Positions 43,105-64,000 are shown, counted from the stretch's first letter. The stretch: DNA of 64,000 nucleotides from Macrostomum lignano (GCA_002269645.1 NIVC01000013.1:620001-684000), one strand, 5' to 3'. Notes: a model not told the origin generated them from the sequence alone. A program made the numbers and translations.

Positions 43105-44593
43105 TTAGCGATTGAAAAGAGCGCAGCAGTTTTTCTTTATGCTTTCAAAAACGGCATAGAGTATTGATACTCTACAGGTGTTGAGATCACTCACGTAAAA
43201 GCAGGTAAATCCATTTGGAAAAACATACGCTACGTAATGGCCTGTTACTACCGAGCTGCCAAGATGAACAACGGCAGCTCGAAGTTGATGAACTCTGCTG
43301 CTTAAGACAAGCTTGAGTTCTACCGGAATGGGAAATGTAGTCTTACGAAAAGAACCATTTTTACGATCGAAAACCACTTGATCAATTCCGATGCACAGGT
43401 ACTCAGACTTCAATGCAGACACCTGATTGTGGCTGCACCAACCGGCCTGACATTTCGGACAGGAAATGTTTGTTTCACCCGACGAGGAAAGAGTAGAGTA
43501 GCGGACTAACTCGGGAAAGCTGCGGTCACTGACATTAGAGATCGACAGCTGCAGGATCGTTGTCGTGTCTTCTTGCTGCCGTCGCGTCACGGTATTGCAT
43601 GAAGAACATACAAGAGCAGTAGTTGACTGTAAAGGTAAGGCGTACGCGGTTCGTGCGTTGTAACAGAAAACGGGATGCTTAAATTAAACTAGCTAGTTTT
43701 TGTAAAAACTAAAGCGCTGGAATCCTCAAGGTGAAAAATTCTGTTACTTGCAATAAGAAGTAAAATAGACTCGCGCACTTATTTTTAGGATTTAAAATTT
43801 AATTTAATTTAATTTAAATTTAAACTTACTTGGTTTTGAAAGTTGTGTTTGATTTCGTCGATGGACAATATTCCTGTTAATATTTTAAGCACGCAGTTTT
43901 CTTCATTGGGGTCCAAATGTAACGCCCTGGTACATCAAAAAACGCGGGCGTGTGCAGTTTCTTCATAGAAGTACGATCGGCAGTGAACAGTGCATTTATG
44001 AAGGAAATCACTGGTGGCGAATCGGCAATTATTGTTAAGCTTTTGCTCAACGTGGCAGCTATGGACTGGCATGCTGCTTTAAACGGGCAATAAGTGCGGC
44101 TCGGATTTGGAAGTCCAATCAGCGGGTGATATGAAACGTGGCCCAAAGCCGAATAGCCAGCTTGCGGCTGCGAATAAATACTACGTGACCGCCTGACCCC
44201 TCTTAAAGCCTTCTCCAAAGGTGAAACAGGTACCTCATGCCGTTGAGTAATAGAAGATGCATCGGTGCTGCAAATGACAGTAGTAGAAATTTGAGGCTCG
44301 GTTGACTCAGTTGGTGTTGTCAATTCTACACTTTCCGTGGAAGACACAGTGGACGCCATCGACAGAGTGGGCGCCATCGACACAGTGGACGCAATCGACA
44401 CAGTGGGCGCCATCGACACAGTGGGCGCCGTCGACACAGTGGACGCAATCGACACAGTGGGCGCCATCGACACAGTGCGCGCCGTCGACACAGTGGGCGC
44501 CATTGACACAGTGGGCGCCGTCGACACAGTGGGCGCCGTCGACACAATGGGCGCAATTAACGAAGCTGCATGTCTGCGCTTCCTGTCTAACAA
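43105..44593 (-). CDS. USP (peptidase C19)-like deubiquitinase, spliced, behind an S/T-rich repeat linker
   Basis: Cys box GLPNPSRTYC...QSI; acceptor CTTTACAG near 43627 then CSSC...LQLSI and CPKC; His box AVVHLGSSVVTGHYVAYV; YVSD. Confidence 0.8.
44343..44557. repeat. 18-bp tandem repeat, about 12 units (GTCGACACAGTGGGCGCC), encoding STAPTV on the minus strand
   Basis: Visible; open in several frames. Confidence 0.95.
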
Positions 44594-46383: not shown

Positions 46384-46844
46384 TTTTAACGGTAAACAAA
46401 AGACCTCTTTTTAAGTAAACGAGGTTGTAAAATCTTTCTAAGCACTTGTGTTAATAAAATGTGCACCGAGTAATTGATCATGCACACTTATAGGTCCACG
46501 AAATAATCTGATTAAAATTGAAAATTCCGTTGCAAATAATGCACCGAAAATGCATTTTTAACCATTAGAATCTGAAAATGCATTATTTGCGCATTTTCAG
46601 CGCAAATAAATGGTAAGTCCAAATTTTAGAACCATATTAGGTATCCTGTCAGGGCCAGGAGCTCCTCCTGACCTGAGATTTCTACTTTCCCAAAGTACAT
46701 CCTTATCAATAATATTTAAGATTTCACCTCCAATGTCTTCCTTTTCCGGATCGTCTGGGTTAGCATGCTCTTTATGACAGGAAAGGGCCGCAATAATATA
46801 ATTGTGGGGTTTGAAGATCTCATGATCTTTGCATTCCGTGTGAA

Positions 46845-47860
46845 TTACTATGGTTTTCTCGGGGTGGCCTGGTAGGTCTTTGAATCCCACCGCCTCCACC
46901 AGTGAAGTACTTATGGTTTTCTCGGGGTGGCCTGGTAGGTCTTTGAATTCCACCGCTGCCACCAGTGAATTACTTGTGGTTGTCTCGGGGTTGTTTCGCA
47001 CAGCGATTTAGGCTCTCCGTCTTCTTACTCGGAAGCCTTCTTAACTCTTAGTAGCGTAGGTAGTGCTGCCACCAGTTCCTTCAGGTCTCGGCCTTCGATG
47101 AAGTGAGTTTCCCGTCGGAACGAAATAACGAAGTCAACGAACACAGCACCGGGTGCAGATTTGCAGCTCAACGTATCAGGCGTCTCGTCAGCAGCACCTG
47201 CCGGGCTTGGTTGGTACAGGGAGGGCTGAGTTAGCCTCTCGTAGGCTTGGGGTTTGCTTTAGTAGAGTCTCAGACAGACCAATGGCAGAGAGATAGTTGT
47301 ACGGGTGACACAGACTTGGAAACTGCAGTCTTCAAACGCTAGAAAACTCCTTGACGGAAACATGGGGGAAAGAGGTCCTATTTATAGCGCGGGATTCACC
47401 CCTGACCCATTGTACAAGATCTCGTGACTCGTTCTATTTTTAGAACTGACGTCACTTGGGGTCTTCAGGCAGAGTGCACGCGGCTGTGACTCAGTTGCTA
47501 TTTTTAGCAACATGAATCACTCCTCTCCTTAGAGAAGGGAGGGGGCCGTAAGCACGTGACTCACCCAGTAAACAAGACCTACTCCAAGAACGAGAGATCT
47601 GTCATGTGACTAGCTCACATGACAGGGAAACCGTGACTGACGAAACAAAGGCAGCCCTCAGCAGAGAAGCCGGGGGCTGAGAAACGCAGGGCTAAACAGG
47701 CAGAAGGAGGGAAGGGAGCAGCAACAGACAGCCAAAAGGAGGGAAGCGGGAAGCTGACCAGCGGCAGACAGCAACCCAAGGCGGGGGCGAGGGCAATGGC
47801 AACTGCTGACAAAGTGCGACGCCTAACACTAAAACTAGCGGATCTCTATACATGACTCTT
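46845..47860 (-). mobile_element. ~1-kb LTR-like insertion in ORF2 of LINE copy A
   Basis: Begins TGTATAG; contains TATA and a transcription-factor motif cluster; 60-bp duplication near its 3' end. No TSD found. Confidence 0.4.
47377..47624 (-). promoter_or_regulatory. TATA box with a dense cluster of MEF2, AP-1, CRE and E/M-box motifs
   Basis: TATAAATAGG (47377-47386); CTAAAAATAG twice (47434, 47498); TGACGTCA (47447); TGACTCA twice (47487, 47557); CACGTG (47553); TGTCATGTGA-5nt-TCACATGACA (47600-47624). Confidence 0.55.
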
Positions 47861-50800
47861 TTATAAATCATGGAGTCTTGCTTAGGGTGGGATTGCATTT
47901 GATCTTTCAGGAAATTGCTTAAGAGCTTAGCTTTTTCCGCTTCGGCATCTGCGTGGGTGTTTTATAGACAAGGAGCGGGTAGTTGACTATCTTAGACCCT
48001 TCCCCTGTCATTTTTTTTATATCTGTCCAAAAGTTTTTTGGTTCTTTCTTATAACTAGTTTTGGCTATCTTAGTGCAAAGATCTTCGAATTTTCTGTATC
48101 TGTGCATGCGAATGGCGTTTCTAATATCTTTTGCGGCTTGATTTGCCTGCACTCTGAAATCGTCTATTCTAGTTTTTTTAATAGCTTTCTAAGCATTCTT
48201 CTATGCTTAATTTTGTTAATTATGTCTGGGGAAGCTGCTCCCTGGGGTCTCTGTTGGGAACCACTTTGTCTATGGTATCGTGGATGCATTGGGTCAGCAG
48301 GTCCACCGCTTTATCAAGGTCTTCGGGGGTAGAGAACCTGCGGCTGATGATCTGTTTGCTGCTAAGTTTGTCTTGAAGGGCCCCTGAAGGTTTCCCAGTC
48401 AGTGTTCCAAAAGCTTTTAGGGGGGTTTCTGTCAAGCTTGCGGTAGGGTCTAAGTAAACTTTAATAATGATAGGGAGGTGATCGCTGTCAAGATTTCCCC
48501 CACTATAACATTACTGGCGTGTTTGTAAAGGTCAGGGGAGCAGATCCCAAGATCTCAAGTACGTTTCTAAGAACGGAGCCGCTGCGGTAGCTAACCCTGC
48601 TGCAGTCACCATAATTATTAAGGATAGTGGGTGGGTTGGGTTGAGAGTCTAGCCACTCAAAAAGCTGTTTGCCTGGGAAGTTGAGCTGGGTGTCAGTCCC
48701 TAGGGCTGGGTGATTACAGTTAAAGTCACCAATGACAATAGTAGAGGGTCTAGAGAATAAATGGTCAAGAAGCCCAGTATCAAGTCGGGTTGGGTCGGGG
48801 CTCTGTAGAACAGGACCACATTTAATTGTTTAAGCTTGTTATTTTTAAGATGGATTTCAAAACTAATGATTTCGTGATTGCTGTTGTCAAAATATTTTTC
48901 AACATTCATGATTTCCAAATGATTTTTGTAGACAACAGCTAGTCCTCTTCTACAGTTGGGGACATCAAACCGGAGCGTGGCATACTCAGGTAAGTATTTT
49001 TTTTCCTCTAGGCAAGTCTCAGAAAAAAGTCCAGTATCTAAGTCTTCTTTGTTAATCCAAGTTGAAATTTCATACTCGTAGAATTTGTTGCTTAACCCGT
49101 TGCAGTTAAGGTGCCCTATGTTTAGAGAGTCCCGCACAACAGACTGTCCCACTTGCCCATTATTTTGAAATAGATTATTAGGTGTTTTGAATTTTTAGAT
49201 CAAGTTTACGCTTAACATTTTTAAAAAAAAATCGGGTTCAGGTTTCACCTCCGCCCGCTTGCGCGGCTTCAGTGTCCCCTGTCCCTGAATCAGGCCCCCT
49301 TCGACCCCTGAGCGCCGCCAGGATTTCTGTCACTGCCTGGATAGCGAGTTGCCCCGCTTCCCATTCAGTGAGCATCTGCCCCGGATTAGCGCCCATGAGC
49401 CGAGTGAGTGCCTGAAGAACTAACTCGAGCACCCCCATCCGGGAAATTAGGCCCTTCTCACTTGATTTCCAACTGTCAGTGGCGACGTCAACTCCTTGTT
49501 TGGGCGCAGCCAGAGTGATGGAGTCAGATGCGACTGCAGGCAGCGTAGGCGGATTGGCGAAGCCGCCGGATTGGCCAGAGCAGGAAGACTCGCCGGCGCT
49601 TCGGCTGATGGGGCAGCAGCAGCGGCAGCGGCAGCGGCGGCGCGGTTCGAGTACACGATAGGACCCAGGATTGGCTTGGTGAGTCCAGGTCGCATTGCAT
49701 CCGCGTAGGAGAGAGGTCCTGGCACCCCAAAGGCCTCCCCCAGGGACTGACTACCAAATAGATTGTAATTTTGCTTTGCTTTCTCTTTCTGTGCCCTAAT
49801 TCGGTCATGTGTTTTTTCGTTGCGATTTCATTGGCTGTTTTAATTTTGGAACACCTGAATGAATAAGCTGGGTGCTCGTCCCCACAGTTAGCGCATTCAA
49901 ACTTGCGGTCCTTGGGGCAGTCAGCAGAGAAATGATCCCCTGCGCATTTGTTGCATCTGTTCGATGACGCGGTACATCTGTTTTCGTGATACCCTAGCCT
50001 TTGGCACTTCTTGCACTGAATTGCTTTGACTGGCGGAAGGTTAACAGACTCTTCACACCGATACCAGCTGAAGCCAAGATGGACGCCGTGGATGCATCGC
50101 TCCATCACACCCTTGCTCTTTGTGAAGAGGCGAACATGTGACGGCTCACCAGTTGCCTTGAAGACGATGCGCACGGCGCCATCAATCGGCAGTTGCTGTT
50201 TTGATTCAGACAGGTGTTTTTCTAATTCTTTTGCATCCACCGCAATGGGGACGTGTTTAACAATAAACGAGTACACTTGTGGTGATTTGAGTGGTGCACG
50301 CACCTGGTCATCCCCATGTTTTGTTGGCCGCTTGGCCGCCATGCGCCTTGTGACTTCAAATTCGTTAATTTTTGTTAGTTTTTAGTGGAGCTGTTAGTAG
50401 AGTGTTAAAGTCTTTAGGATGATCTGGAGTTATTATGTAGCCGGGGCTGTGGTAAAGATCCTTAACTGATCTGATTCTGACTTCAGGAAAGTTCGTCTTC
50501 AAGAACCATTCGAACTTGATTGGGTCTTTGCCCTCTTGCGCGATTTCGAAAATGACTGGTGCTGAGTTCTTAGGTTTAGAATTGTCGTTAGTTTTTTAGC
50601 TGATAATTGCTATTGGCAGAATTTAGTTGGCTAGATAGACTAGAGCTAGGTTGGCTAGTTCGGCTTGGTTGCTTAGGTTGATTTGGCTGATTAGTTTGGC
50701 TAGATTGACTAGGTTGGCTATTGTTATTGTTGCTTGGCTTGCAAGATAATTTAGAGTTAGTTTCAGTGTGCTGTTGCTGCTGTGCTGTTGCTTGTGGTGG

Positions 50801-52679
50801 CTTTTGAGTGTGCGAATGCTGTGACGTGGCAGATGACGGCAGCTGCTGCTGCATTTGCATGTCGGCTTGTGACTGCGAGCTGAGTTTGTTGGTGGCTGAT
50901 TGCTGTTCGTGAGCTTGTTAGTGTGGTTGCTGAGGTTTCTGAGCGTTTGCCTGCTGATTGTTAGATTTGCGCCCTGTGCGACTGCTCCAGCGTGACCTAA
51001 TTTGCTTAAGATTCTCTGCTTCAAGCTCTGCTCTGCGGCGAACCGACTCTTCGTCGTCGAGATCGCAGGTGATGCTGCTATCGATTAGTTGCACACAAGG
51101 ATTAGAATGAGCAGAGGCAGGAACTGGGTCTTTGGGAATTCTTGAAGCGTGTGTGAGTCTGAATGTGAAGTTGACTCTAAGGTCCTTGATTTTTCCGTCC
51201 TTGAGGACGGCTTTCTGAAGGTGCGTTTGAGTTGCACTGCTCATGACCAGCAGCGAGCCGCTAGCGAGTTTTTGAGACCAAGCTATATTCGAGGAGGGAG
51301 CTTTGGCTCTCATCACTGACAGTGTATTGGAGTCCTGGGCTGGAAGTTCGTCCCGAATTGGGGAAAACCGGCTGAGTCCGGTTTCCTCTTGCCCCTTGTG
51401 CCCCTCCCCCCCCCTTGGCTGGCCCTTCCGAGACTAGGGTAATCCCTCTCTCAGACTATATATTATCCAAACAGTGTTTAGAGCTGGGTGGTGAAAAAAC
51501 CTTGAGGTTTGCAGCCCTGCAGTAGGAATTTTGCGAAGTTTCGCCTTCTGGCAGGGACTCGGCCCTGGTAAATAAGCTGCCCAGACTCGCCCCAATCTAA
51601 AAGCCTTCTTCCGTAGACTTTGGGGTCTCCCCACTCTCGGACTGCTTCTTAAAAATTCCAATTCTTTTTTGCGCACACTCGGGTTTTGTCGTTGGGTGGT
51701 GGCTTAGGTGGACTTGGTCCTAGCACCGTCCCTGATTCCACTTTTGGGTTGGCGGTGTCTTGTACCGTAGATTTGGGCAAGTAGCACCAAAATTCCCCCC
51801 CTGGCCTATACGTCGGGGCCCAAGCATGTGGGTATCTCGGGCTTAGGCCCCTGGCAGTGCCCCTCAGCGGCAGAGCCCCCTTTCGGGCTGATCCGCGGGT
51901 AGCCCCCGGCTTCCCACCCTCGTTTAACAACAACAACAATGCAGAACCCGCGCGCAACCGGCCGGCCGGTTGTGGACCGCTGAGAGAAGCCTGGCGCCGC
52001 CGATGCCGCAGCCGTGTCGACGAGCCGTCGAGCCGCCGCCGCTGCCGAGCCGGGCTGCCGAGCTGCCTGGCCGAGCCGTCGAGCCGAGCCGAGCCAAGCC
52101 GAGAGAGCCGCCGAGAGCCGAGAGAGCCAGTCGAGTCGCCAGGAGCCGCCAGGAATGTGTAGCGACCCCAGTGGTTATAGGTCACAATTAACAAGTCGTC
52201 CCACACTGGATAACGTCTAGAATTAAATGCTAATCGATTACTAGTCACCAGAGAGGCTGTTGTTGGTCAGCCCCTGGGTGGGGCTCTGCCGCAATATATA
52301 TATTTATAAATTAATTTTTTTAAACGAGCATTGTTTTATATTTTGCGAAATAGTATTCACTTTGTATAAAAAGTTTTGAGGAAAGAGGTGTAAAAACTTT
52401 AAAACATTTAGAATGAATATAAAAGTAAAATTATTGTTAGAATATTTAACTCAAAAAGGAAAATATTAGGAATAAAAAAACAGGGGAAGGGGATCCTTTT
52501 GAGCTGGGTGAATTTAAAAACACAGAGAATAGTATTAGAAAGGTAAAAAAATTAATATCGATGTATAAATTGAGAATAAAAATTTCATTTATTAGTATTA
52601 TTTGTGTTGTATCGCATAAGTTGATATTGTAAATAAAAAAACATGTTGTTATTGTAGAATTAAAACAATTTTTAGTAAA

Positions 52680-55600
52680 AAGTTTTACTAGAAGTTTTTC
52701 AAAGACTTTCCCTAAGCAGGATGTTAGGCTAATAGGTCTATAGGAGCTAGGTGATTGCGGAGGTTTATTGGGTTTGGGGATCATTGTGACCACCGCTTGT
52801 TTCCATGACGTAGGGAAGATGCCTGTTTTGATGCAGGAGTTGAACAGGTTGGTGATCCGGTTGATCGCTACTCCTTCGAGGACAAATTTGATGATTTTGT
52901 TTGGGATCTTGTCTAATCCGGGGGCACTGTTGACCTTGAGATGTTCGAGTTCCCAGATTATATCGGAGACAGTAAATGGGATCTCAAGCAGGTAAGTGAT
53001 TTTGACAGTTTTACCCTGCGGTATGGGTTTGAACTCAGGTCTTTTGCACACTTTCTCGATCTCTTCTCTGAAGGAGAAGCTGGTGGATAAGATGGGTTGC
53101 ATTCTGTTATTTAGTGTGGTTGCGAGTAGGTTTGCTTTGTCAATGTCTGTGTGTGCAGTCTCTCTTTCCGTTGAGAGAGAGAGAGAGAAATAGTTCCTGT
53201 CCTATTCTTGCCCATAAGAACTTTAGTGTCCCTCCAGAAATCTTTGATTTTTTTATTGTTACTGTTCTCAACCATTCTTTAACACATTTTGGTAAGTTTC
53301 CCGGCCTCAAAGGCATCAATTTTTCTTCTGATTTCTTTGGCTGTTTGGTTGGCTTTCTTTCTGAGAGTCATCTCTCGTCTGGTTAAAGATCCTACGGAGC
53401 TTCCTACGTTCTTTTATGAGTGTTATAATCTCCTGAGGGAGAGGTCTTTAGAGATTTCTGGTTGGGACTACCTCTTCGATAGTTTTTGTATGACTTCTGT
53501 AATAGTTTTTACTTCCTGGTTTATTTTGGTGATTGAGTCTAGGGGAGAACTTGTGTCTATTCTCGTGAAGCATACTTCCTCTTAAATGAGCTTGGAAGAT
53601 GTCCCAGTCTACTTTGTTGATTTTTTTTTTGTTTTTTTTCGGTCCTGACCAGGCTGGGGGCTTGAAGTTGAGAGTGACGAAGATGGGAAGGTGGTCACTG
53701 CCGACATCCTCACCAATGTGGAACTTGCTTATCCAGGGGCAGAAATCGGTAGACGAAATCCCCAAGTCTAGAACGTTTCTGGAGATGACTCCTGCTTTGC
53801 TCGCGATTCTGGTGAAAACCCTGGGGCATTTAGGATTATGGGGTTGTTAACGTTGTTTGTTGCCTATTCATAGAGTTGGTTTCCTGCTCTATTGCATCTG
53901 CTCTCGCTGCCAAGAAACCCATGCCTAGCATTAAGGTCCCCCAGCAGGAGGCCGTGTCTGTTTGAAAGGAGCCTGGAGAGGAGGTTGGTATCAAGCTGGT
54001 CCGGAGAGGGATTCCTGTAGACCAGTGAGAGCGTAAAAGCTGGACAAGGATTATTTGAGCAGTCTTTCCAGTGATGTGGTTCGGAGCAGATCCGGCAGGC
54101 GATGCCCTCCTCGCACTCTCGTGCCGAGTGACCGAAAGCCTGGCATCGTTGACACTGTAGCGCTCTCACTGGAGTCAGTACGGCTGGTTTCACAGAGATA
54201 GTGACAAAAGTCTGTCGCAATGCAATCGGCCACGCACCGTGCTGCTAGGGATTCATCGTCTGTGAAGGCTCTGATCATCTGTGTAGCGTATCCCTTATTT
54301 TTGGACCTGATTCGGCGGACGCTCACGACGTTGAGTCCGAGGTCGTTTTTGAGCATTTCGAGGAATCCAGCCTCTTGGATGGTGGTTGGGACATCAGGGA
54401 TGACAAAGGTTGTCAGAGGTTTTCGGCCATGTTGATTTTGGTTGACATTGGTGAATTGGTCAGCGCCAATACGGTTGTTTAACGGCCTGGCTCTCGGAAG
54501 TCGCCTGGTGACAGGTTCACCACCCAGCAGCGGAGCTCTAAGTTCGCCATGTAGAAGACTTTTGTGGTCTCTGACTGTGACCGGAGTCACTACATATCCT
54601 GTGCCGTTGGCCAGGGGCTTGGTTCTGATGGCTCTGGCTGAGCCCTGGAAATTGGTTGCCAGCCATTCTAGAAATTTCAGCTGGTCCCCGGCAACTTCGG
54701 CGTCAACCTCAAAAGATGACAGGTGTGGCCTCAGAGTTAGACCTAGCTGGAGGAGGAGCTGGTGCTCTAGTGACGCCTGCGTAGGACCGGAGATTTCCGC
54801 TTTGAGTCGCTGCTGCTTCTGCTGCCGCGCCAGCGCCGTTCCGAGACGCCATCGCCGCTGAGCCATTTCCGCCGTCGGACGTCGCCGCCGCCGCAGCCGC
54901 CTCGTCGTTGTCGTCAATGGTCGTTGGACTGTTGTTTACCTCGTTGGTGACACGGAAAGTAAGTGAGATTTGCAATCTTGAGTTTTGCAATCAGGCACCG
55001 AGTGCAGGAAGTGTTGTTGCGTAGAGCCAGACATTATGTCGACAGAGCCTGGCGTTGTCCTGAATTTTGCAATCTGCTTATTAGTTTGCTTTTCCTTTAT
55101 CCAGAATGACCTGACCGCGCCCATGGAGACAGTGGCGACGAAGGGACGCAGGCCGAGCTCCGGTTCGTCATCAGAATGATAAGGAATTTTGTCTGAAGCC
55201 TTTGTATAAAAGTTTACTAGGCAGGAGTTGAATTCAGGTGCCTGTAGGTCAGCTTTGTCGATGAGGAACCTTTTGATTTGTTCCACCGCAGGGTGCCAGA
55301 TGTAGTTAGGTTGGAGCGGAACGCCTGGGTAGGAGTATTTAGGCACGTACCAGTACACTAGGCGACGTTCGAGCTGGCGGTTCTTGAAGGCTAGCGGCAG
55401 TACATCCTTGATGAGTTGCTGGTAACAGTCCTCGGCCACTGATTGCAGCATGTTGGGGAAGTATTCAATTCGCGCATCGTGCCTGTACCGAATCTTTTCA
55501 GCTTCCGTGACGTCCGGTGAGTCCGGGAACTGAAGGTTGGAAGTCGATCTGGACTCGTTCTGCATGACGAAGTCGTCTATCTCTGCGATTGCCTCGCTGA

Positions 55601-55760
55601 AGTTGTCGTTCATGCGGCTTCTTTTGCTCGTCGGTCGCGATTGCTTGGGCTCGAGTCTTGATTGTACATTTAATAAGAATATTAAATATAAAACTATAAA
55701 ACTAATTATTCTTGTTGCCCAAAGGGCACAGTTGCTTCTTTGGCTATTGGCCACGTGCTT
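52680..55760 (-). mobile_element. LINE copy B: AlkB-ORF1, internal deletion fusing zinc knuckles to mid-endonuclease, RT truncated
   Basis: ORFs 54936-55754, 54709-54990, 54051-54917, 53864-54220, 53448-53765 (GSDHLPI) and 52446-53102 (APGLDKIPN...YRPISLTS). Confidence 0.9.
54950..55613 (-). pseudogene. AlkB/ALKBH2-3-like Fe(II)/2OG dioxygenase domain at the N-terminus of LINE ORF1
   Basis: FNSCLVNFY, IPYHSDDEPELG (HxD), VATVSMGAVRSF, FLHSVP (distal His). (R)ISLTFR is restored by a 1-nt insertion. Confidence 0.92.
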
Positions 55761-55911
55761 TGACTAGGATGATTCAGCAGCGAACTCTTAAAAATTATTG
55801 AGAACACTGCAATTTATTGATATTTTTCTAAAATTTCTACTTGTTATCTTAAAACGAAGTGCCGAAACCGGCGCGGGTCAGTTCCGAAGAACTCTCAGCG
55901 CGTAGTCTCTT

Positions 55912-58900
55912 CAGGTCTGAGAGGCTGGTGGTCAGCCTAACCCTGGGGTGGGATTCCCCTGTTTCTTTCCTGACGCCTCATGGCATCCCAGAGGACATTG
56001 AGGACGTGGGTTCGGCCCAGAGCCCGAGGGGCTTCCGGCTCAATATGGAAGCTGTGGAGCTTGGCTGCCCTCATCTTGAGCAGCCAAGCCACCCCCAGCT
56101 GCTTGACCCTGTCTGCGAGCATCGGCATACCTGCCAGCTTGTGCAGATATTCGATGCTGATGTAGGATGGCACACCATATCAGATACGGAGAGCCAGGTT
56201 TTGAAGTTTTTGCAATTTTATTTGATTAGTCGCACAAATTTGGCTCAGCATAGGCGCTCCATAGGTGAGAGCGCTTTCTACGTATGCCCTGTACAGCATT
56301 CTGTGGGTGGTGCTACTCAGCTTTGTCATTTTTGCAATTCTGCATAGCGACATAACAATGGCTCTGCTGGTATCTGCCATGTCCACATGTTTGTTCAAAC
56401 AGAGGCTTTGGTCAAGGAGGACACCAAGGAATTTCACCTCCTGACAGTACGGAACCTCAGTGTCCCCCAGATATAGTTTGGGTCGCAAGTCCATGCGCCT
56501 AGTAGGCTTGTAGTTGAAAGCGATTGCTTTACTTTTCCCGGAATTCAGTTATCTAATGCCCTGTTTACCGCACCAGTCAAAGACTCGTCTGAGGTAGCTT
56601 TGAAGGGATGTTCGGAGCCCCGCAAAGGTGTCTGCTGAGGCCCAGACAGCCATGTCGTCTGCGAATTGACTGCGTTTGACGCTTGGGATGTTGGGAGTCG
56701 GCATTGAGCTGATGAAGAGGAGATACAGAAGAGGGCTCAGAATGCCTCCCTGAGGGACGCCAGCCGGGGTGGTGTGGGGATCGCTCAGGGCCCCCTCGAT
56801 TCGAACCTGGATTTGTCTGTCTCGCAGGTAGTCTGACAGGATTCGCATGAGCATAGGTGGAAAACCATCAGTGAGCATGCTATGCCTGATCTTGTCGTGC
56901 CAGGTAGAGTCAAAAGCTGCCACTGCATCCAGGAAGACTGCAGCGGACTTTTTAGCTTTGCCCTTTGCTACCATGGCATCTTGTGCCAGGCGGCACAGGC
57001 TGTCATACGTGGAGTGAATTTTGCGGTAGGCGCATTGGTCATCTCCTAGGGTCTTATTGTTCTCAAGGTGCTTAGTAAGTCTTTTTGCTATTAGCTTCTC
57101 AAACACTTTGCCCAGACATTAGGTCAGGCTGATTGGTCTGTAGGAGTTGGGGTGTTCGAGCGGTTTGTCCGGCTTGGGGATCATCGTCACCACAGCTTTC
57201 TTCCAGGCGCTAGGGAAAATCCCCCAACCGTAGCAGGCGTTAAAGAGATTAGTGAGTCTCGTTATTGCCACCCCCCTCTAAGCCCAGCTTGAGGACGCAG
57301 TTGGGAATCTTGTCTAGGCCGGGTGCACCATCGGGCCTGAGGTGCTCCAGTTCCCACAACTGTGTCTGCCACAGAGAATGCAGCATCAAGTGGGTGGGTC
57401 TCAATGGGTTCGATTCCCTCAGGAACGGGATTGAATGAGGTGAGCTGTGCAACATCGGCCACCTCACGTTTAAGCCGGTCGCATGTGGAGGGGACTGGGC
57501 GCATCTTCGAGTCCAGAGTCTCGGCTAGAAGGTTAGCCTTCTCCAGATCCGTGTGCGCAGTTGTTTGACCCAGAGTGAGGCTGGGGATGGAGTTTGGCTT
57601 AAATTTGCCCATCAGCTTTTTAGTGTCGTGCCAGAAATTCTTCACTTTCTTATTTTTGCTATTCTCAACAATACTCTCACAGATTTTGGTTAGCTTTCCA
57701 TTCTGGAAGGCGCTAATTTCTCTCTTTATGCGATTTGCGAGCTGGTTTGCTTAGTTTTTGAAATTTTGATCCCGTGTGCTGAAGAAGAGGCGCCTGAGTC
57801 GTCTGCGCTCTTTGATCAGGTCGAGGATGTACTTGGGTAGGGCATTTTTGGCACCAAAGTTTGGCACTGTAGAGTCAATCACGGTGTGAATGGCCTTTGT
57901 GATGTGATCCACTTCGGCATTAATTTGAGCAGCATTTGATAACTGAGCTCAAAGCTTCACTGATTTTGAGCCAAAACTCGTCCCAGTTTGTTTTTGAAAA
58001 GTTTTTGGGTCTGGGGGGACCAGCCCATTTCTTAGACCGAATGTTGAGCGTGAGGATTATAGGTAAGTGGTCACTGCCCAGGTCAGGACCCACCTCAAAG
58101 TCCTGCACAAATGGGAGAAAGTCCTCAGTGGCCAGGGCGAGGTCCAAGACATTCCTAGAAATCAGCCCGTTTTTGGTGGCCAGTCTGGTGAACTGACCGG
58201 CCTTATTGAGAATGGTGGGCGAGGTGGGGCCCTCAGACAGCCAGTCGTGCAGCTGGTTGCCAGCCATGTTGTTGCTGCTGTCACCCCCGAGGAAGCGGTG
58301 TCTGGCGTTGAGGTCACTCATGAGCACACTGCGCCTACGGGAGAAAATATTTTTGAGTAGGTTCAGGTTCAGGTGGTACGGTGCTGGAGACCAGTACACC
58401 AGAGCGAGATTGAAGTCAGGACCAGAGTTGTCAGACAAGCTGACAGTGCAGGAGATGGCTTCATGGTTGACATTGTCGTATTGCAAGCGCACATTTGTGA
58501 GTTTGACGCGAGGAGAGTGAGCAAGGAGCAGCCCGCGTTTGACATGCGGGGTATCATACCGAATGATAGAGTACCCGGGAATCTGGACAGTGTGACGACT
58601 TTTGAGAATGGTCTCAGAGAAGAGGGCAATGTCTAGCTCTTGACTGACGACCCACTGTGTCAGCTCTCTAATTTTCGGGTTGAATCCCCTGCAGTTTAAA
58701 TGCATAATCTTCAGGGCTGTAGTTTGATTGTTTGAGTCTACAGTTAACTCACTGAAGTTTCAATTCAAGTCTTGAGTTTAGCTGCCTGAGACTAGGACTC
58801 AGTGGTCGCGCCAGCCATGCTCGGCACTTCCTGGAGTGCAGCCCGCACAATGTCCTCAACCATTTTACTGGTTGATTCCACAGTGAGGACCTCCCCAGGC

Positions 58901-59155
58901 GGTCGGGACAGGGCCTGCACAACCACTTAAGTCAGGGAGCGGGTGATCAGGGGCAACAACATGCTCACCACCGACAGAAAGTCAGCTGACGGAGCAGTCG
59001 CATTGGCATCAGCGCTGGCAGCTGCTGCTGACTCGGTCTCGGCCGCCGGAGCGCTCTTGGCATCATCAGTCACGATGACAAGCGGCCGGATCGCGGCGGG
59101 TACCGGCACTGTGCGTCTGCCTCGGCGGATCAGCCAGCCGCTGTCGGAGTCGTCA
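55912..59155 (-). mobile_element. LINE copy C: ORF1 C-terminus, near-complete but decayed ORF2 (EN plus RT), 3' UTR
   Basis: MHLNCRG...SET...GSDHLP; FLDAVAAFDS; GVPQGGILSPLLY; QFADD; VKFLGVLLD. Cut at 59156 by an EnSpm end. Confidence 0.93.
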
Positions 59156-61070
59156 CCCAGCGGGAAAGGCACCGCTGGAACAACGTTGTGTTCCAACGGC
59201 GGACCAACGGTTACAAATGTCCAGCGCAAAACCGTTGGAACAACGGTGGCAATACAACGGTTATACAACGCTATACCAACGCCAAACCAACGCCTGTGTG
59301 GCCAATTGTGGGTGACTTTTTAAATGTACGTACTTTTTAGCTTATACCCGCAGCCTTTCGATCATCCATCCGAATGATATTTATCGCAAATATCTCCTGA
59401 AATTTCACAATTTGAAACAGTGCCATTCTCTTAAGCTAGGGATCAAATGCGTATCCCAATGTCCAATGCAAAAAAATTGTATAAAAATATGACGAGTACA
59501 TTCAATGAAGATACTGCAAGTTTTTTTTAAATAGGCTGTTAGATGGTTTTTAATTAAGTTTAATTAAGCGTTCTGATTTCATATGTAATAAAGTTATTAG
59601 TAAAATTGTATATAAGCTGGTAATAGCAAAATTTTTAGTATGAAATTGAACGGCTATACTATGTTAATAAGTGACAACGGTGGCTTTAATCAGTGATATA
59701 ATATGTTCAATTGCTGTCGCTGTCATTATCGCTACTGCCGTTGCTTACAGATTCGACGCTACCACCACCAGGTCGACTTCGCTTGAAGCCCGACGCTGAC
59801 GCACGACTTTGCCAAGTGATCGCCTTTTGTCTTTACCAGCCTTCAGAGCTGCGACTACGGCCTTCTCCACCTCGCTCTCCCCCGGTTGGAGCTCACTGAT
59901 TGATTTTTATATAAGCTTTTTATTAAAATTCAACTCCTGCACTGATAGCTTGGCAGCGGTATATACAACAGCAAACAGCTTACTTTGAATGATAGGAAGA
60001 AAGGTGGCACGAAAGGCCAACTGTCTATCAGAAAGAGCGGAGCCCGATAGTCTCTGCAGTCCTTGGCCATTGTAGTTGATCAGGGCCAGCATTTTGGTGG
60101 AGAGAATTTTACGCACCATTCTGCGTACAGTGTCCCATGTGGTAGACGACTTGCACAGACGAAGATGTGGCTTCTGTAGAAATAAATTAAGAAGGTACAG
60201 CGACAGGCAAGCAGAGCATTTCCTAGATGGTGAAAATCAGCATGGGAAACAAAAACCTAGAAATCGTATGCATTTCATTCTAAGGACTTTCTGCCTATCC
60301 AGAAGCAATTATACACTATTTATACAAAATTCTACGCTTGCAAATGGTAGGTAAGAAGTCAGAGTTTACGAAAAACTCACCAGATCATTGGCCAATTCCG
60401 GATTATTTACATAGTCAATATAATCCTCCCAGGAATCAAGTGGCAATTTAGAATCCGAAGCCACTATTCCGTCTCTAAAGTCATCGCCATTGCAAGCTTG
60501 AATCAGACCCTTCAGCTCGTTACGGCAGCAATGCACATGCTTGTCCGACGAAGATTGTACAGTCCAAGCAGGCACAGTCCTTCAGACAAATTAAGATCAA
60601 CACCCAGCTTTGCCTCCATCTTGGACCGTAGGGTGGTGAGGCTGCTTGCACCGAAATTTAAAGACGTTAAATCCGCAAGATCAGGGCATGATTGTTGCGT
60701 AATCAATTGCCCTCGATTCGTAGTCCTGCATTGGATAGCCGAACGCTGTTGTGATCACCAGAATGGTGTCGTGGTGTGGCTGATGATCCAGGTGACTCAG
60801 CCACCAGTTCAATGCTTTATTGGAACGATCTCTGCTGTGATGCACCTGAAAGATGTGGCGTGGCTGCAGCCGTCAGTTGATGGCTTTGAAGGCGCTGCTC
60901 TGCAGACCGTGGAGCCTGTGACAATGCTGAAACGGATTCAGAAGCCAACATTGATGGTGGGAGTGGTAGGAGTTCTGATGATGGTTCAGTTGTATCCAGT
61001 GAAGCCATAGAAGGCGATTCGCCGCCGAGGGGCTGGGTCGAAGCACAGATTGGTTGATCCATGTTATTGT
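59156..61070 (-). mobile_element. Fragment of another EnSpm/CMC element: CCCAGC terminus with CAACG repeats and a spliced DUF4806/BEN-like accessory gene
   Basis: CCCAGC at 59156 followed by many CAACG(G) repeats. Exons TVRRMVRKILSTKMLALINYNG...LAFRATFL and EVEKAVVAALKAGKDKRR with GTAAG/GTGAG donors. Confidence 0.6.
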
Positions 61071-61288
61071 TATTATCTTTTAGTTTCGGTATTACCCCCC
61101 TGCAATTTAGGTGGCCGATCTTAAGCCCTGTGGCAGTGGGGATAGAGCTATCATGCCCGTTATTACCGAACGTATCTTAAATACTCACATTTTAGGTCTG
61201 GCCATCCGCCTGTCGCCGGGGGGCGCCAAGCAGCTGACCAAGGCCTTGGTGACTATCCGACCCGCCTTCGAGGACCCGGGCCAGAACC

Positions 61289-63941
61289 CTACCAACTACG
61301 TCTTGCACCGTTTGACGGACGGGTGCCTTCAGTAGTAGGCGGCAGTTCGGCTGGGCTCTGCCAGAGGGTCGTCAGCACCTCAACGAGTGCCTGGACCAGG
61401 AGAGGAAAAAACCCACTCACCAGTCCTTGAAATTGAGGATCTCCGCTAGCAATTGGCGGCGTGTCATTATTTGAAGTCATATTCGGCGCAGATGTTTGTG
61501 TTGTCGAGTCGGTCGATTCGCGCACAGGGCGCTTTCGGCTAGGGAGGCTGGGGCCTGTCGCCATTGGCGCCCGTGCTGCGGCGTCGACCGACCTCGATGT
61601 TGCTGCCGGTGCTGGTCTCAGTGCGGGGGCGGGGGGCGCCGCTGCTGCCGCTGCCGATGATGGTGCTGCTGCCGCAACTGCCGCACTAGGTGGTGGAGCG
61701 GTCGACTGGCCAGTAGCAGCCGTTGCTTGGTGGGCGCCCGCTGCATAAGCAGCCGCACGCCTTTGGGCCGCGCTGTGGCATTCAATCGCCACCTGGCAGC
61801 TGGGGTAGTTGGCACGGTGCGGCTCATTGCAATTTGCACATTGTACCGCCTCTTGGTTGCTACAGTCACGCCAATGGTGTTCAGCCGCGCAGATCCTGCA
61901 GCGCTTGGCCGCCTTGCACCGCTGGGCGTGGTGGCCGAACCGCTGGCAGTTTTGACACTGCGGTGCGCGTGCAGGAGTAGCGGTTTTATTCGGCTCACAT
62001 TGGTAGGTCGTGAAGTCTGTTATTTTACACGTAGCGAGACAGGCATCAACAGTTTGTTTGTTGTGAACAAACACTCGCACAAGGTGAGTGGGCTCATTGT
62101 TGCGTTTGGCGATTATGCGGCTGACAGAGATTACTCTCAAACCTGCGTTCTCCTGCAGATGCCGCTTAAAGTCACCGGCCTCGACCTCCGGTGGTACGCC
62201 GCGCACCACAAAGGAGTGGACCGCCTGGGTCACCGGTCGCTGCTGCACGGTAGGTCTAGGTCGTAGGTCGGGTCGAGCTCTCGGAAGCCGCCTCGTCACC
62301 GGCCCCCCGACAAACTGGGGCTCACGCAGGGGCCCACGCAAGAAAATTTGGTGGTCCTGCGGAGTGGCCGGGAAGACAAAGAAGCCGTCTTCCTGCGAGA
62401 GCTTCCTGGTAAGTGTGGCCCGGGCCGACCCTTGAAAGTTGGCCGCGAGCCACCTGAGAAAGTCAATTTGGCTTGCCTCAGCCACAATGTTGAATACTAT
62501 CGGTACCACATTATTGTTGCCCCTGTTATTATTAGGCCGTGGTCCTTCCGCTCTTGGAGCTGCCGCCGTGGCAGCATAGGAACGGCGATAGCCGCCCCGC
62601 CGCGCACCGACATTTCCGCCGTCGTTGCGCTGGGCTAGAGGGCCGCCGGGACCGCAGGGCCGGACGCGCCGGCCGCCCCGCGATCTGGCTGCCCAGTTCC
62701 CGCTGCTGTCCGGGGGCCCGGCGCAGCCAGGCTGGTGCACGCCCCGCCACCGCCAGGCCCTTCCCCGTCGTGTGCAGCTGCTGTTTGGGTTGTGCCTCCG
62801 CGTCCCGACGTGGCACTGCCAGGTGGGTGGGTTACTCGAAACGTGAGCGAGATACGAACCCCTTCCTGCATGCGCACCGCCGGGACGCTGTGCTGGCATC
62901 TGCGCTGACACCCGCCTGCCATGACAATGACTGAGCCTGGCTCGGTTTTGAAGCGCCCTATGATTCGATGGTCACTATTACGCCGGACAAGGAAGCTCCG
63001 CACCGCCCCAAGCGACACTGTGGCAATATACGGGTCAGTGCCTAGCTCGGGCTCGTTGTCTGCGTAATACGGTATCATGTCGTCGGCTGTTTCATAAAAA
63101 TTGATAAGGCACGAGTTGAATTTCGGCATGCCGAGGTCAGCGTTGATTTCCAGGAAATCCCGCAGGTCCTCGACAGCCGGGTGCCATGCTTGATTAGGTT
63201 CTAACGGTACACCGGAATAGGAGTAGTTTGGGCCATACCATACTACTCTGCGCTGCTCTTGCGGCCGGTGCCTAATAGCTTTCGGCAGTCGGCGATGAGG
63301 CAGTCGTAGAGCTGCTGGGAGACCGATTCAAGTAGTTTTGGGTAGTACTCTAGTACAACGTCGCCATGATGCTGAATATTCTCCCCGGATCGGTCTGGGT
63401 GAACTGGGAAGCCGATGGGATTATGAAGATAGTTTGCTGAATCCGCATTGACCTCGCTGTCCGCAACGTCATTACTATTTGATGTGTCGGATACTTCAGA
63501 TGCCGCAGCTGACTCGGGATCAGGGGCCACAGTACCTGGGTCATCAGCAACCTGGCCGGGTTCCTCTAGTACTGTATCAGAGCCACTTGATGTTGAGGCA
63601 TCCGAGTCGGCTGGGATCTTAACGATCTCAGATTGAACATTGACCGCCGGGTTTGCTAGCACCGGCGAATCGGGAGCCGATGAATGGTCAGACCCAGGTG
63701 TAAGCGTGCTCGGTGCAAGGGGCGGTGTCGTCTTGCTGGACGGGCCAACGGAGGAGCGCCGCCTTTGGGCCGGAGGCACAGATACTCGGCTCATCGTGCC
63801 TCTACTAATTGCTACAACCGAAGAAGATGCACCGGCAGTATTGCTGTTTGACGACCAGTCCGAGGACTGGCGGTTGTTCGCTCTCTTACTCGGCGGCTCA
63901 ACTGCGCCAGCCGATTTTTGGTAGGTTGGTAGTTTAGACAT
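61289..63941 (-). pseudogene. LINE copy D ORF1: low-complexity N-terminus, AlkB, linker, RRM, three CCHC knuckles; two frameshifts; ORF2 missing
   Basis: ORFs 63243-63941, 62635-63129 and 61289-62911 join by single frameshifts. RRVVWYGPNYSYSG...NSCLINFY...HSVP...RISLTFR; QCQNCQRFGH. Confidence 0.9.
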
Positions 63942-64000
63942 GCCTAATAAGATAAATATTAAAACTTATTTTTTGGTGTAACCTATGGGGCAAAAAGCAA

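What the first reader, a model, noticed from the sequence alone, without database searches (positions are those of the whole stretch)
54051..55613. LINE ORF1 carries an N-terminal AlkB (ALKBH2/3-like) demethylase domain
Seen: a complete catalytic set (NxY, HSD, distal H, and R-x5-R after restoring one deleted G: TGC-A[G]A-ATC). It is followed by an Ala/Gly linker and the gag-like RRM plus CCHC region. Known: AlkB enzymes oxidatively remove m1A/m3C and some m6A; several plant RNA viruses carry AlkB in their replicase. AlkB is not among the Jockey-superfamily ORF1 types I know (RRM/CCHC, PHD, esterase). Inference: an ORF1p that coats its own RNA in cis and erases methyl lesions or marks that would stall reverse transcription or flag the RNA to host surveillance.
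Basis: partly seen in the sequence, partly recalled or inferred. Interest (0 to 1): 0.85.

Follow-up and report, generated by a model that had tools for sequence, protein, structure and literature searches.

The report
LINE gag protein with AlkB demethylase
A family of flatworm jumping genes (LINE retrotransposons) has fused an AlkB/ALKBH3-type demethylase, an enzyme that strips methyl damage from RNA and single-stranded DNA, onto the protein that coats their own RNA; this architecture turned up in none of the literature searches run here and suggests these elements clean their template before copying it.

Summary
On the minus strand, 55613-54966 encodes an AlkB domain (Pfam 2OG-FeII_Oxy_2, E=2e-22). 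Its closest solved relative is human ALKBH3, then ALKBH2. It is followed by a low-complexity linker, two RRM-like domains and CCHC knuckles, then APE/RT remnants.

This copy is dead: three small indels and an internal deletion. The window is Macrostomum lignano scaffold NIVC01000013.1. It holds two more diverged AlkB-gag LINE copies (B at 63941-61289, D at 51283-49848).

Intact relatives show the architecture is genuine. Another M. lignano locus has a near-intact element where one ORF reads from AlkB into gag. Four uninterrupted ORF1s of 757-962 aa from unidentified sequencing runs have AlkB, RRMs and three CCHC knuckles, followed where the contig extends by an APE or APE+RT ORF2.

All intact copies keep N-x-Y, H-x-D, the distal H and R-x5-R. 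Between families, AlkB has the lowest dN in ORF1 (dN/dS about 0.08, dS saturated).

AlkB-bearing ORF1s also sit upstream of two Penelope-like elements. No prior description was found. Substrate and benefit are inferred, most likely removal of RT-blocking m1A/m3C from the element's own RNA.

The parts
55614..55848 (-). Element A: probable 5' UTR, between the 3' end of element C (about 55849) and the ORF1 ATG
   Evidence: C's conserved 3'-terminal motif ends near 55849. The ATG is at 55613. The length is similar to the 287-bp 5' UTR of the L001 element. Inference only.
54966..55613 (-). Element A: ORF1 N-terminus and AlkB dioxygenase domain (first reading frame). NFY 55214-55206, HSD 55178-55170, distal His 55004-55002.
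   Evidence: Pfam PF13532 E=2.3e-22. PDB phmmer gives ALKBH3 at 1.1e-19. Family-profile hit covers 55529-54969 at 347 bits. Motif coordinates.
54970..54975 (-). Element A: 1-bp deletion that destroys the first Arg codon of R-x5-R and shifts the frame
   Evidence: Frame comparison. Relatives read ...G-[VI]-R-I-S-L-T-F-R.
54949..54969 (-). Element A: last AlkB strand ISLTFRV (second Arg of R-x5-R at 54954-54952), in the second frame
54713..54948 (-). Element A: Ala/Gly/Ser-rich low-complexity linker ending in ...SYAGVTRAP...ATPVIF
   Evidence: Translation. The SYA and PVIF motifs are shared with B, D, L001 and the Logan ORF1s.
54711..54714 (-). Element A: 1-bp insertion in a T-run (PVIF|EVDAEV) that causes the second frameshift
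54174..54710 (-). Element A: gag-like region with two RRM-like domains (EVDAEV...FLEWLATNF...TTFVIPDVP...CETSRTD)
   Evidence: 41.7% identity to B's gag. An AF2 model of the homologous B segment has two beta-alpha-beta-beta-alpha-beta units, and Foldseek's top hits are tandem-RRM proteins.
54172..54174 (-). Element A: 2-bp deletion (SRTD|.PVRALQC), the third frameshift
   Evidence: compared with L001 'SRTDEPVRALQC'
54059..54154 (-). Element A: two CCHC zinc knuckles (CQRCQAFGHSAREC, CRICSEPHHWKDC). The third knuckle and the ORF1 C-terminal domain are deleted.
   Evidence: Direct reading. Pfam zf-CCHC E=0.006, below cutoff.
52590..54043 (-). Element A: ORF2 remnant (APE endonuclease from about residue 85, then the N-terminal part of RT), joined to ORF1 by an internal deletion at about 54043
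   Evidence: tblastn of L001 ORF2 covers 54157-52590 at 41-42% identity. Pfam Exo_endo_phos_2 and RVT_1 traces.
61289..63941 (-). Element B: second, diverged AlkB-gag ORF1.
- N-terminal Ser-rich region 63941-63411.
- AlkB 63410-62824, with a frameshift at about 63286 and HxD mutated to YAD at 63066-63058.
- Linker with a frameshift at about 62655.
- RRMs and three CCHC knuckles 62515-61796.
- C-terminal region to the stop at 61289.
   Evidence: Pfam E=2.7e-19. tblastn 53.5% to A's AlkB. Profile hits. Motifs. P0002, an intact relative, has HAD.
61096..61150 (-). Element B: start of ORF2 (IGHLNCRG...), then truncated
   Evidence: No ORF2 homology between 59155 and 61095.
55849..59154 (-). Element C: 5'-truncated copy (ORF1 tail, APE and RT) of the same family as the near-intact AlkB-LINE in L001. 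It lacks about 490 nt of 3' UTR.
   Evidence: blastn 93.7% over 3293 bp to L001 12328-15614. Pfam. 3' ends aligned.
46615..51283 (-). Element D: third, decayed AlkB-gag LINE.
- AlkB C-terminal remnant 51283-51149 (...LRVNFTFRL).
- Gln-rich linker.
- gag and three CCHC knuckles 50595-49848.
- ORF2 remnants 49113-46615.
   Evidence: Relatives of this family, P0129 and P0274 (both partial at the N-terminus), each read from AlkB into gag in one chain.

Best explanation
SHOWN. The finding is the decayed 5' half of a non-LTR (LINE) retrotransposon of Macrostomum lignano. In functional copies its ORF1 is a single polypeptide made of:
- a disordered N-terminus
- an ALKBH3/ALKBH2-type Fe(II)/2-oxoglutarate AlkB dioxygenase
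- a low-complexity linker
- two RRM-like domains
- three CCHC zinc knuckles
- a helical C-terminal region.
It is followed by an APE-RT ORF2. At least four diverged families in M. lignano and four more in unidentified sequencing runs share this architecture. The AlkB module keeps every iron- and 2OG-binding residue and evolves under purifying selection at least as strong as on the RRM/CCHC part.

INFERRED.
- ORF1p binds the RNA that encoded it through its RRMs and knuckles, which places many AlkB active sites along the template.
- The enzyme oxidatively removes Watson-Crick-face methyl groups (1-methyladenine, 3-methylcytosine and similar) from the single-stranded RNA, and possibly from the exposed single-stranded target DNA or cDNA.
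- Those lesions stall reverse transcriptases, so their removal should raise the yield of full-length, unmutated insertions.

My estimates: architecture real, about 0.97. Active copies are catalytically competent AlkB-type demethylases, about 0.8. The selected substrate is the element's own RNA, about 0.45.
For: Domain identity.
- Pfam PF13532 E=2e-22.
- PDB sequence search: ALKBH3 1e-19, ALKBH2 5e-11, EcAlkB 6e-5. With the family profile, ALKBH3 scores 104 bits and ALKBH2 69 bits.
- AF2 model of P0001 has residues 165-365 at pLDDT above 90. Foldseek gives ALKBH3 TM 0.82-0.86 at rmsd 2.2-2.8 A, then ALKBH2, with ALKBH6, EcAlkB and ALKBH5 clearly lower.

Single ORF.
- L001 copy 2 ORF 17259-18392 spans AlkB to gag. 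Copy 1 is one 1-bp indel away from a continuous ORF1.
- Intact ORF1s P0124 (962 aa), P0125 (757), P0130 (843) and P0132 (892) exist. P0130 has an APE+RT ORF2 downstream; the ORF after P0124 shows APE only before the contig ends.

Recurrence. There are three copies in this window. M. lignano UniRef proteins of the D family also read from AlkB into gag.

Catalytic residues. N-x-Y, H-x-D, H and R-x5-R are invariant in all intact TE copies.

Selection.
- P0124 vs P0125: AlkB dN 0.23, dS 2.8 (saturated), ratio about 0.08. RRM+CCHC gives 0.17; linker and termini give 0.36-0.45.
- P0130 vs P0132: AlkB dN 0.30, against 0.32 for RRM+CCHC and 0.60-0.65 elsewhere.
- Mean inter-family identity is 43% for AlkB and 39% for gag.

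RNA-binding part. Two RRM-like folds match HuR, NONO, Pub1, HuD and U2AF65 tandem RRMs at E about 1e-7.

Precedents. Plant-virus AlkB domains repair m1A/m3C and prefer RNA (PMC2553587). An orchid Gypsy element encodes an active AlkB-family demethylase (PMC9289625).

Established knowledge (mine, not retrieved): m1A and m3C block reverse transcriptases, which is why AlkB pre-treatment is used in tRNA sequencing.
Against: - No biochemistry: substrate, cis action and benefit are all inferred.
- The copy in the finding is dead (three indels and an internal deletion). Copy B has lost the first iron ligand (H to Y). Copy D keeps only a remnant.
- TE AlkBs are 2-9 residues shorter than cellular ALKBH3-like proteins in the segment before the 'RRxVWYG' strand. 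By my recollection this is the ALKBH3 substrate-recognition hairpin, so specificity may differ.
- ALKBH3-type enzymes also act on ssDNA, so RNA is not the only candidate substrate.
- The RRM call rests on an AF2 model from a 7-sequence alignment (mean pLDDT 73.6, pTM 0.35). Pfam finds no RRM.
- dS is saturated, so dN/dS values are approximate.
Confidence: 0.55

Rival explanations
1. The AlkB domain is an epitranscriptomic eraser. It removes m6A, or another regulatory mark, from the element's RNA to escape reader-mediated decay, sequestration or silencing, rather than repairing RT-blocking lesions.
For: The orchid Gypsy AlkB protein demethylates m6A in vitro (PMC9289625). Arabidopsis ALKBH9B promotes Onsen mobilisation (PMC10686560, listed). 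The shortened lid region leaves specificity open.
Against: Sequence and fold place the domain with ALKBH3 and ALKBH2, not with the m6A erasers: ALKBH5 has TM about 0.6 and ranks 34th or lower. For human L1, the eraser ALKBH5 suppresses retrotransposition and the writer METTL3 promotes it (PMC7873242 abstract).
Confidence: 0.2
2. The enzyme works on DNA. It clears alkyl lesions or N6-methyladenine from the nicked, single-stranded target site or from the nascent cDNA during target-primed reverse transcription.
For: The best structural matches are ALKBH3-ssDNA and ALKBH2-dsDNA complexes. ORF1p travels with the RNP to the target site (general LINE biology, my knowledge).
Against: The domain is fused to RNA-binding RRMs and knuckles rather than to ORF2p. 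The viral AlkB precedents prefer RNA. There is no direct evidence either way.
Confidence: 0.15
3. The AlkB module is a non-catalytic nucleic-acid-binding or protein-interaction domain, comparable to inactive methyltransferase domains in DIRS1 elements, or a neutral passenger.
For: Inactive enzyme domains in retroelement polyproteins are known (DIRS1 MTase, PMC4738411).
Against: Every Fe(II) and 2OG ligand is invariant across families that share only 33-69% identity. AlkB has the lowest dN of any ORF1 segment.
Confidence: 0.07
4. Chance juxtaposition or one-off capture: a LINE inserted next to, or transduced an exon of, a host ALKBH gene, so AlkB is not really part of ORF1.
For: In this window every AlkB and gag segment is in a different frame. 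M. lignano also has host-like AlkB genes (P0281, P0215).
Against: The same order and linker motifs appear in at least 8 diverged families. There are uninterrupted ORFs and purifying selection. TE AlkBs score higher to each other than to any cellular AlkB.
Confidence: 0.02

Closest known systems
Type I LINE ORF1p (RRM plus CCHC zinc knuckles, as in Jockey, I, R1 and some CR1-group elements; Khazina & Weichenrieder 2009, from my knowledge)
   Same: RRM-like domain(s) followed by CCHC knuckles. It is encoded upstream of an APE-RT ORF2, and 5'-truncated copies exist.
   Different: It carries an N-terminal AlkB dioxygenase of about 200 aa joined by a low-complexity linker. No such enzymatic module was found described for LINE ORF1 in the searched literature.
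Human ALKBH3 (and ALKBH2): m1A/m3C demethylases of ssDNA/RNA and dsDNA respectively
   Same: Closest solved relatives by sequence and fold. Same N-x-Y, H-x-D...H and R-x5-R set.
   Different: About 31-34% identity. Fused to a retrotransposon gag. The segment corresponding to the ALKBH3 recognition hairpin is shorter. Orthology is not established.
AlkB domains in replicase polyproteins of plant RNA viruses (Flexiviridae, Closteroviridae) (PMC2553587, PMC544882)
   Same: A selfish, RNA-templated replicon that carries its own AlkB. Those domains are shown to repair m1A/m3C with a preference for RNA. Viral AlkBs are structural matches.
   Different: There the domain sits inside the replicase, not in the RNA-coating protein. 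Those are RNA viruses of plants, not a retrotransposon of an animal. Identity is 30% or less.
paALKBH5-like ORF of Phalaenopsis Ty3/Gypsy elements (PMC9289625)
   Same: A retrotransposon-encoded AlkB-family dioxygenase, argued to act on TE RNA.
   Different: ALKBH5 clade (m6A eraser). It is a separate additional ORF in an LTR element, in a single recent plant lineage.
Esterase (SGNH) and PHD modules of CR1/L2-type LINE ORF1 (Kapitonov & Jurka 2003; Metcalfe & Casane 2014, from my knowledge)
   Same: A precedent for modular, sometimes enzymatic, accessory domains in LINE ORF1.
   Different: Different enzyme class. AlkB acts on nucleic acid bases.
ALKBH8 (cellular RRM + AlkB protein)
   Same: RRM and AlkB domains in one polypeptide (PDB 3tht appears among the fold matches).
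   Different: Opposite domain order, tRNA wobble-uridine modification, and a distant AlkB clade (TM about 0.4).

Membership tests
AlkB family of Fe(II)/2OG dioxygenases (Pfam PF13532) | Sequence match to the family model above the curated threshold | tested here: met
   Element A 80.6 bits, element B 70.6 bits, cutoff 31.2.
AlkB family of Fe(II)/2OG dioxygenases (Pfam PF13532) | Double-stranded beta-helix fold superposable on solved AlkB proteins | tested here: met
   Tested on the close relative P0001, not on the window copy. AF2 pLDDT is above 90 over residues 165-365. TM is 0.82-0.86 to ALKBH3.
AlkB family of Fe(II)/2OG dioxygenases (Pfam PF13532) | Iron triad H-x-D...H | tested here: met
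   Element A has HSD at 55178-55170 and H at 55004-55002. The triad is invariant in intact relatives. Element B in the window has YAD, so it is not met in that dead copy.
AlkB family of Fe(II)/2OG dioxygenases (Pfam PF13532) | 2OG-binding R-x5-R and N-x-Y | tested here: inconclusive
   N-F-Y and the second Arg are present in A. The first Arg codon is destroyed by a 1-bp deletion. Both motifs are intact in B, L001 and all intact relatives.
AlkB family of Fe(II)/2OG dioxygenases (Pfam PF13532) | Fe(II)/2OG-dependent oxidative demethylation activity | not testable with these tools
   Needs biochemistry.
ALKBH3 subfamily | Closest to ALKBH3 among characterised AlkBs | tested here: met
ALKBH3 subfamily | Orthology: clusters with animal ALKBH3 in a phylogeny | tested here: inconclusive
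   In an NJ tree of 58 domains the deep nodes have under 40% bootstrap. With the 4-sequence profile A3, the M. lignano host-like P0133 (137 bits) and the best short AlkB hits such as P0131 (138 bits; short hits carrying a name in the separate search were all bacterial) score alike, and spider ALKBH3-like P0195 scores 117. With the 3-sequence profile A1, human ALKBH3 scores 104.
ALKBH3 subfamily | Substrate-recognition beta-hairpin (the R122/E123 region of human ALKBH3, from my knowledge) | tested here: not met
   TE AlkBs are 2-9 residues shorter here and lack the W-x-Q...G...PRL pattern. The P0001 model shows coil in this region.
Non-LTR (LINE) retrotransposon | ORF2 with APE endonuclease and reverse transcriptase downstream of ORF1 | tested here: met
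   Remnants in A. Intact in L001 (926 aa) and L002 (948 aa).
Non-LTR (LINE) retrotransposon | 5'-truncated copies sharing a common 3' end | tested here: met
   Element C equals L001 positions 12328 to the 3' end, with a shared terminal motif.
Non-LTR (LINE) retrotransposon | Target-site duplications and 3' tail | not tested
   The copies abut one another, so flanks were not resolved.
Type I ORF1p (RRM + CCHC) | CCHC zinc knuckles | tested here: met
   The C-x2-C-x4-H-x4-C pattern is read directly: two knuckles in A, three in B, D and relatives. Pfam zf-CCHC passes its cutoff only in P0132.
Type I ORF1p (RRM + CCHC) | RRM fold | tested here: met
   The AF2 model of B residues 133-385 has two beta-alpha-beta-beta-alpha-beta units at pLDDT 80-94. 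Foldseek top 50 hits are tandem-RRM proteins at prob 1.00. Confidence is moderate because the alignment is shallow and there is no Pfam RRM hit.
Jockey clade or superfamily | RT-domain phylogeny with reference LINE clades | not tested

The most novel reading that the evidence does not exclude
Template self-repair is a recurrent retroelement strategy. An ALKBH3-type demethylase has been built into the RNA-coating ORF1 protein of several LINE lineages and, separately or by exchange, into the ORF1 of Penelope-like elements. There it removes RT-blocking or surveillance-flagging base methylation from the element's own RNA. If so, RNA base methylation would be a real, selectable barrier to retrotransposition in animals.
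Probability: 0.4. Interest if true: 0.85.

Novelty: new variant of a known kind. Interest (0 to 1): 0.75.

Why it matters
LINE ORF1 proteins are regarded as RNA chaperones with a small repertoire of accessory modules. An ORF1 with a conserved, selected nucleic-acid demethylase would be, as far as these searches show, the first case of a LINE carrying its own base-repair or epitranscriptome-editing enzyme. It parallels AlkB in plant RNA viruses and in one orchid LTR element.

It makes one question directly testable: do methylated bases in the RNA template (m1A, m3C or m6A) limit reverse transcription or mark retroelement RNA for the host?

The host, Macrostomum lignano, has established transgenesis (PMC5730564). 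Near-intact and intact copies are available for cloning.

The same module in Penelope-like elements suggests convergent or transferred use across unrelated retroelements.

A practical point: M. lignano 'Fe2OG dioxygenase domain-containing' gene models such as P0001 and A0A1I8JCX4 are transposon ORF1s, not host repair genes.

Tried and rejected
- First protein search with the frame-corrected AlkB+linker+gag query returned one hit. Probably the Ala-rich linker filled the 8000-candidate list. It was repeated with linker-free alignments.
- The gag-only profile search gave only a weak Haliotis hit (3e-5), so gag relatives outside this group were not found that way.
- The word-indexed AlkB search returned only AlkBs of about 200 aa; those that carry a name are bacterial. 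It missed the TE fusions. The exhaustive search found them.
- NJ phylogeny with 100 bootstraps. Only shallow clades are supported (A+B+P0001 92%, P0124+P0125 100%, P0130+P0132 100%). Monophyly of TE AlkBs and their source (host ALKBH3-like, bacterial or viral) remain unresolved.
- blastn of the Logan and JGI contigs against the window and L001 gave no useful similarity. The organisms behind SRR31628392/394/403/434/437, SRR19430222 and JGI 3300055003 remain unknown.
- P0124 vs P0271 differ by one codon, so that pair says nothing about selection.
- Element D's AlkB: only the last 45 profile positions are detectable in the window (E=4e-4). It counts as AlkB only because less decayed D-family proteins exist.
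- Ten literature searches found no LINE or Penelope-like AlkB. AlkB mentions in the krill and tubeworm genome papers are host genes.
- The 3'-terminal hairpin fold is not clearly better than shuffles (z=-1.7).
- RT clade assignment (Jockey or other) was not attempted, for lack of reference sequences.
Full report
WHAT IS THERE. The window is Macrostomum lignano (free-living flatworm), assembly GCA_002269645.1, scaffold NIVC01000013.1, at roughly 620-684 kb. This rests on an exact match of the 765-aa ORF at 36000-38297. The finding lies on the minus strand. From the ATG at 55613, the ORF reaching 54936 matches Pfam 2OG-FeII_Oxy_2 (PF13532) at E=2.3e-22.

Three small lesions interrupt the reading:
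- a 1-bp loss in the first Arg codon of R-x5-R (about 54970-54975)
- an extra T in a T-run at PVIF|EVDAEV (about 54712)
- a 2-bp loss at SRTD|PVRALQC (about 54173).

An internal deletion then joins the second CCHC knuckle (54097-54059) to the middle of the ORF2 endonuclease. Endonuclease and RT remnants run on to about 52590.

THE NEIGHBOURHOOD. Window positions 46.6-64 kb hold four LINE copies, all on the minus strand.
- Element B (63941-61289) has a Ser-rich N-terminus, AlkB (Pfam E=2.7e-19), a linker, and an intact 540-aa gag ORF with three CCHC knuckles. It has two frameshifts, and H-x-D has mutated to YAD.
- Element D (51283-46615) keeps only the last AlkB strand (...LRVNFTFRL), a Gln-rich linker, gag with three knuckles, and ORF2 remnants.
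- Element C (59154-55849) is a 5'-truncated copy.
A and B share 53.5% identity in AlkB and 41.7% in gag. They are different families, not duplicates.

IS ALKB REALLY PART OF ORF1? Yes. A's AlkB is 46% identical to M. lignano protein P0001. Its locus L001 carries two head-to-tail copies, 99.7% identical, of a near-intact element of about 6.45 kb. That element has a 287-bp 5' UTR, ORF1 at 10001-12705, and an intact 926-aa APE+RT ORF2. Window element C is 93.7% identical to its 3' 3.3 kb. In copy 2 the ORF 17259-18392 reads without interruption from ...WHSDDE...RISLTFRV through the linker into the gag RRM region. Copy 1 differs from a continuous ORF1 of about 902 codons by one 1-bp indel.

The exhaustive profile search of 1.84 billion representatives ranks long proteins above the short cellular-type AlkBs. 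P0124 (962 aa), P0125 (757), P0130 (843) and P0132 (892) are uninterrupted ORFs with AlkB, linker, gag and three CCHC knuckles, plus a C-terminal helical region. They sit on contigs whose next ORF is the ORF2: APE+RT after P0130, and APE alone after P0124, whose downstream ORF runs off the contig end. M. lignano UniRef entries A0A1I8JCX4 and A0A1I8GKP7 are less decayed relatives of window element D; both are partial at the N-terminus but read from AlkB into gag in one chain. P0002 is a B-family fragment that retains H-A-D.

WHICH ALKB? By sequence, the nearest solved proteins are ALKBH3 (1e-19) and ALKBH2 (5e-11), with E. coli AlkB far behind (6e-5). The AF2 model of P0001 is confident over the domain (pLDDT above 90 for residues 165-365), with a disordered N-terminal 160 residues. 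It superposes on ALKBH3-ssDNA complexes at TM 0.82-0.86 and rmsd 2.2-2.8 A, and on ALKBH2 at about 0.8. ALKBH6, EcAlkB, ALKBH5, ALKBH8 and NMAD-1 are clearly lower.

All intact TE copies keep N-x-Y, H-x-D, the distal His and R-x5-R. One difference stands out. The segment before the 'RRxVWYG' strand is 2-9 residues shorter in TE AlkBs than in cellular ones. By my recollection this segment corresponds to the ALKBH3 recognition hairpin, so substrate handling may differ.

The origin of the domain is unresolved. With the 4-sequence profile A3, the best short AlkB hits (about 138 bits; the short hits that carry a name in the separate search are all bacterial) and an M. lignano host-like gene (P0133/P0281, 137 bits) score about the same. 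With the 3-sequence profile A1, human ALKBH3 scores 104 bits. The NJ tree has no supported deep nodes.

THE GAG PART. Pfam finds no RRM. However, the AF2 model of B's gag core shows two consecutive beta-alpha-beta-beta-alpha-beta units (residues 6-76 and 100-172, mostly pLDDT 80-94), followed by the knuckles. The Foldseek hits shown (top 50) are tandem-RRM proteins such as HuR, NONO/SFPQ, Pub1, HuD, U2AF65 and Sxl, at E about 1e-7 and prob 1.00. This fits type I LINE ORF1p. The alignment was shallow (7 sequences), so confidence is moderate.

SELECTION. Between the intact families P0124 and P0125, AlkB has dN 0.23 and dS 2.8 (saturated), a ratio of about 0.08. The ratio is 0.17 for RRM+CCHC and 0.36-0.45 for the linker and termini. 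Between P0130 and P0132, AlkB dN is 0.30, against 0.32 for RRM+CCHC and 0.60-0.65 elsewhere. Across six families, AlkB is on average more conserved than gag (43% vs 39% identity). The domain is therefore maintained by selection in replicating lineages. It is not a passenger.

MECHANISM (inferred). ORF1p of LINEs binds the RNA that encoded it. Here each bound molecule brings an ALKBH3-type active site to the template. ALKBH3-type enzymes and the AlkB domains of plant RNA viruses remove 1-methyladenine and 3-methylcytosine from single-stranded nucleic acids, and the viral ones prefer RNA (PMC2553587). These lesions block the Watson-Crick face and stall reverse transcriptases (established knowledge, mine). 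The most economical reading is that the element cleans its template, and perhaps the single-stranded DNA intermediates, so that ORF2p can make full-length, unmutated copies.

The rivals are:
- m6A erasure to evade readers. This has precedents in the orchid Gypsy element (PMC9289625) and Arabidopsis Onsen. But the fold is not ALKBH5-like, and for human L1 the eraser is inhibitory (PMC7873242).
- Action on target DNA or cDNA.
- A non-catalytic role, which the invariant ligands argue against.
- Chance capture, which the evidence above refutes.

BEYOND LINES. Two other top hits are ORF1s of Penelope-like elements. P0206 (JGI metagenome, 883 aa) has AlkB plus a weak GDSL/SGNH signal. It lies between an ORF ending in GIY-YIG and an ORF with RT. 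P0273 (SRR19430222, 1012 aa) precedes an ORF that gives weak Pfam hits to RT and GIY-YIG. The two RT-EN proteins are 44.6% identical, and the ends of contig L004 repeat each other, as in a tandem array. AlkB has therefore been recruited by at least two unrelated retroelement classes.

NOVELTY. Ten full-text searches and targeted reading found AlkB in plant RNA viruses and in one orchid LTR lineage. None found it in LINE or Penelope-like ORF1. Repbase Reports, Dfam and subscription journals could not be searched, so an unnoticed database entry cannot be excluded. The proteins already sit in public databases as 'hypothetical' or 'Fe2OG dioxygenase domain-containing' proteins. I rate this a new variant of a known kind: a LINE ORF1 with a new enzymatic module.

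VERDICT. The functional interpretation is plausible and untested. Interest is 0.75.

Noticed in passing
L004:1-7148 and L005:2120-7398: AlkB-bearing ORF1s (P0206 883 aa, with a weak GDSL/SGNH signal; P0273 1012 aa) lie upstream of RT plus GIY-YIG ORFs. These are Penelope-like elements. The ends of L004 repeat each other, as in a tandem array. Organisms are unknown (JGI 3300055003; SRR19430222).
   Followed up: partly
window 46615-64000: Four LINE copies of three or four families (D, A, C, B) lie head-to-tail on the same strand with little sequence between them. This LINE-only cluster could be a nest or a piRNA-cluster-like region.
   Followed up: partly
window 16100-29100: A Maverick/Polinton-like virus-like transposon: rve integrase (16122-16811), A32-type packaging ATPase (19930-20691), protein-primed PolB (26176-27540), and several unassigned ORFs.
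   Followed up: partly
window 36000-38297: An intact 765-aa ORF with DUF1258, DUF4218 and Tnp2-type transposase signatures. It is called as a gene in the NCBI annotation and was used here to identify the scaffold.
   Followed up: partly
L001:9714-21146: Two 99.7%-identical full-length AlkB-LINE copies sit directly head to tail. They differ mostly by single-base indels, which may be long-read assembly errors. ORF2 of copy 1 is intact, which suggests recent activity.
   Followed up: partly
L001:16112-16166 and window 55849-55900 (-): A conserved 3'-terminal motif of about 50 nt, including a GUUC-UUCG-GAAC hairpin, is shared by the L001 element and window copy C. C lacks about 490 nt of the 3' UTR upstream of it. 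The fold is not clearly better than shuffles (z=-1.7).
   Followed up: partly
P0281 (BOX15_Mlig032459g1) and P0215 (BOX15_Mlig015948g2): M. lignano also has host-like AlkB proteins. One has an RS/K-rich N-terminus and a canonical ALKBH3-like core. The other has C2H2 fingers before the AlkB domain. They are candidate sources of the TE domain but are not resolved as such.
   Followed up: partly
window 534-1132 and 44343-44554: Tandem repeats: a unit of about 20 bp in about 29 copies, and an 18-bp unit in about 12 copies. The latter lies inside an ORF with a TVS(T/M)AP repeat.
   Followed up: no
window 59155-61095: Sequence between truncated element B and the 5' end of element C has no homology to the LINE proteins. 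Its content was not identified.
   Followed up: no
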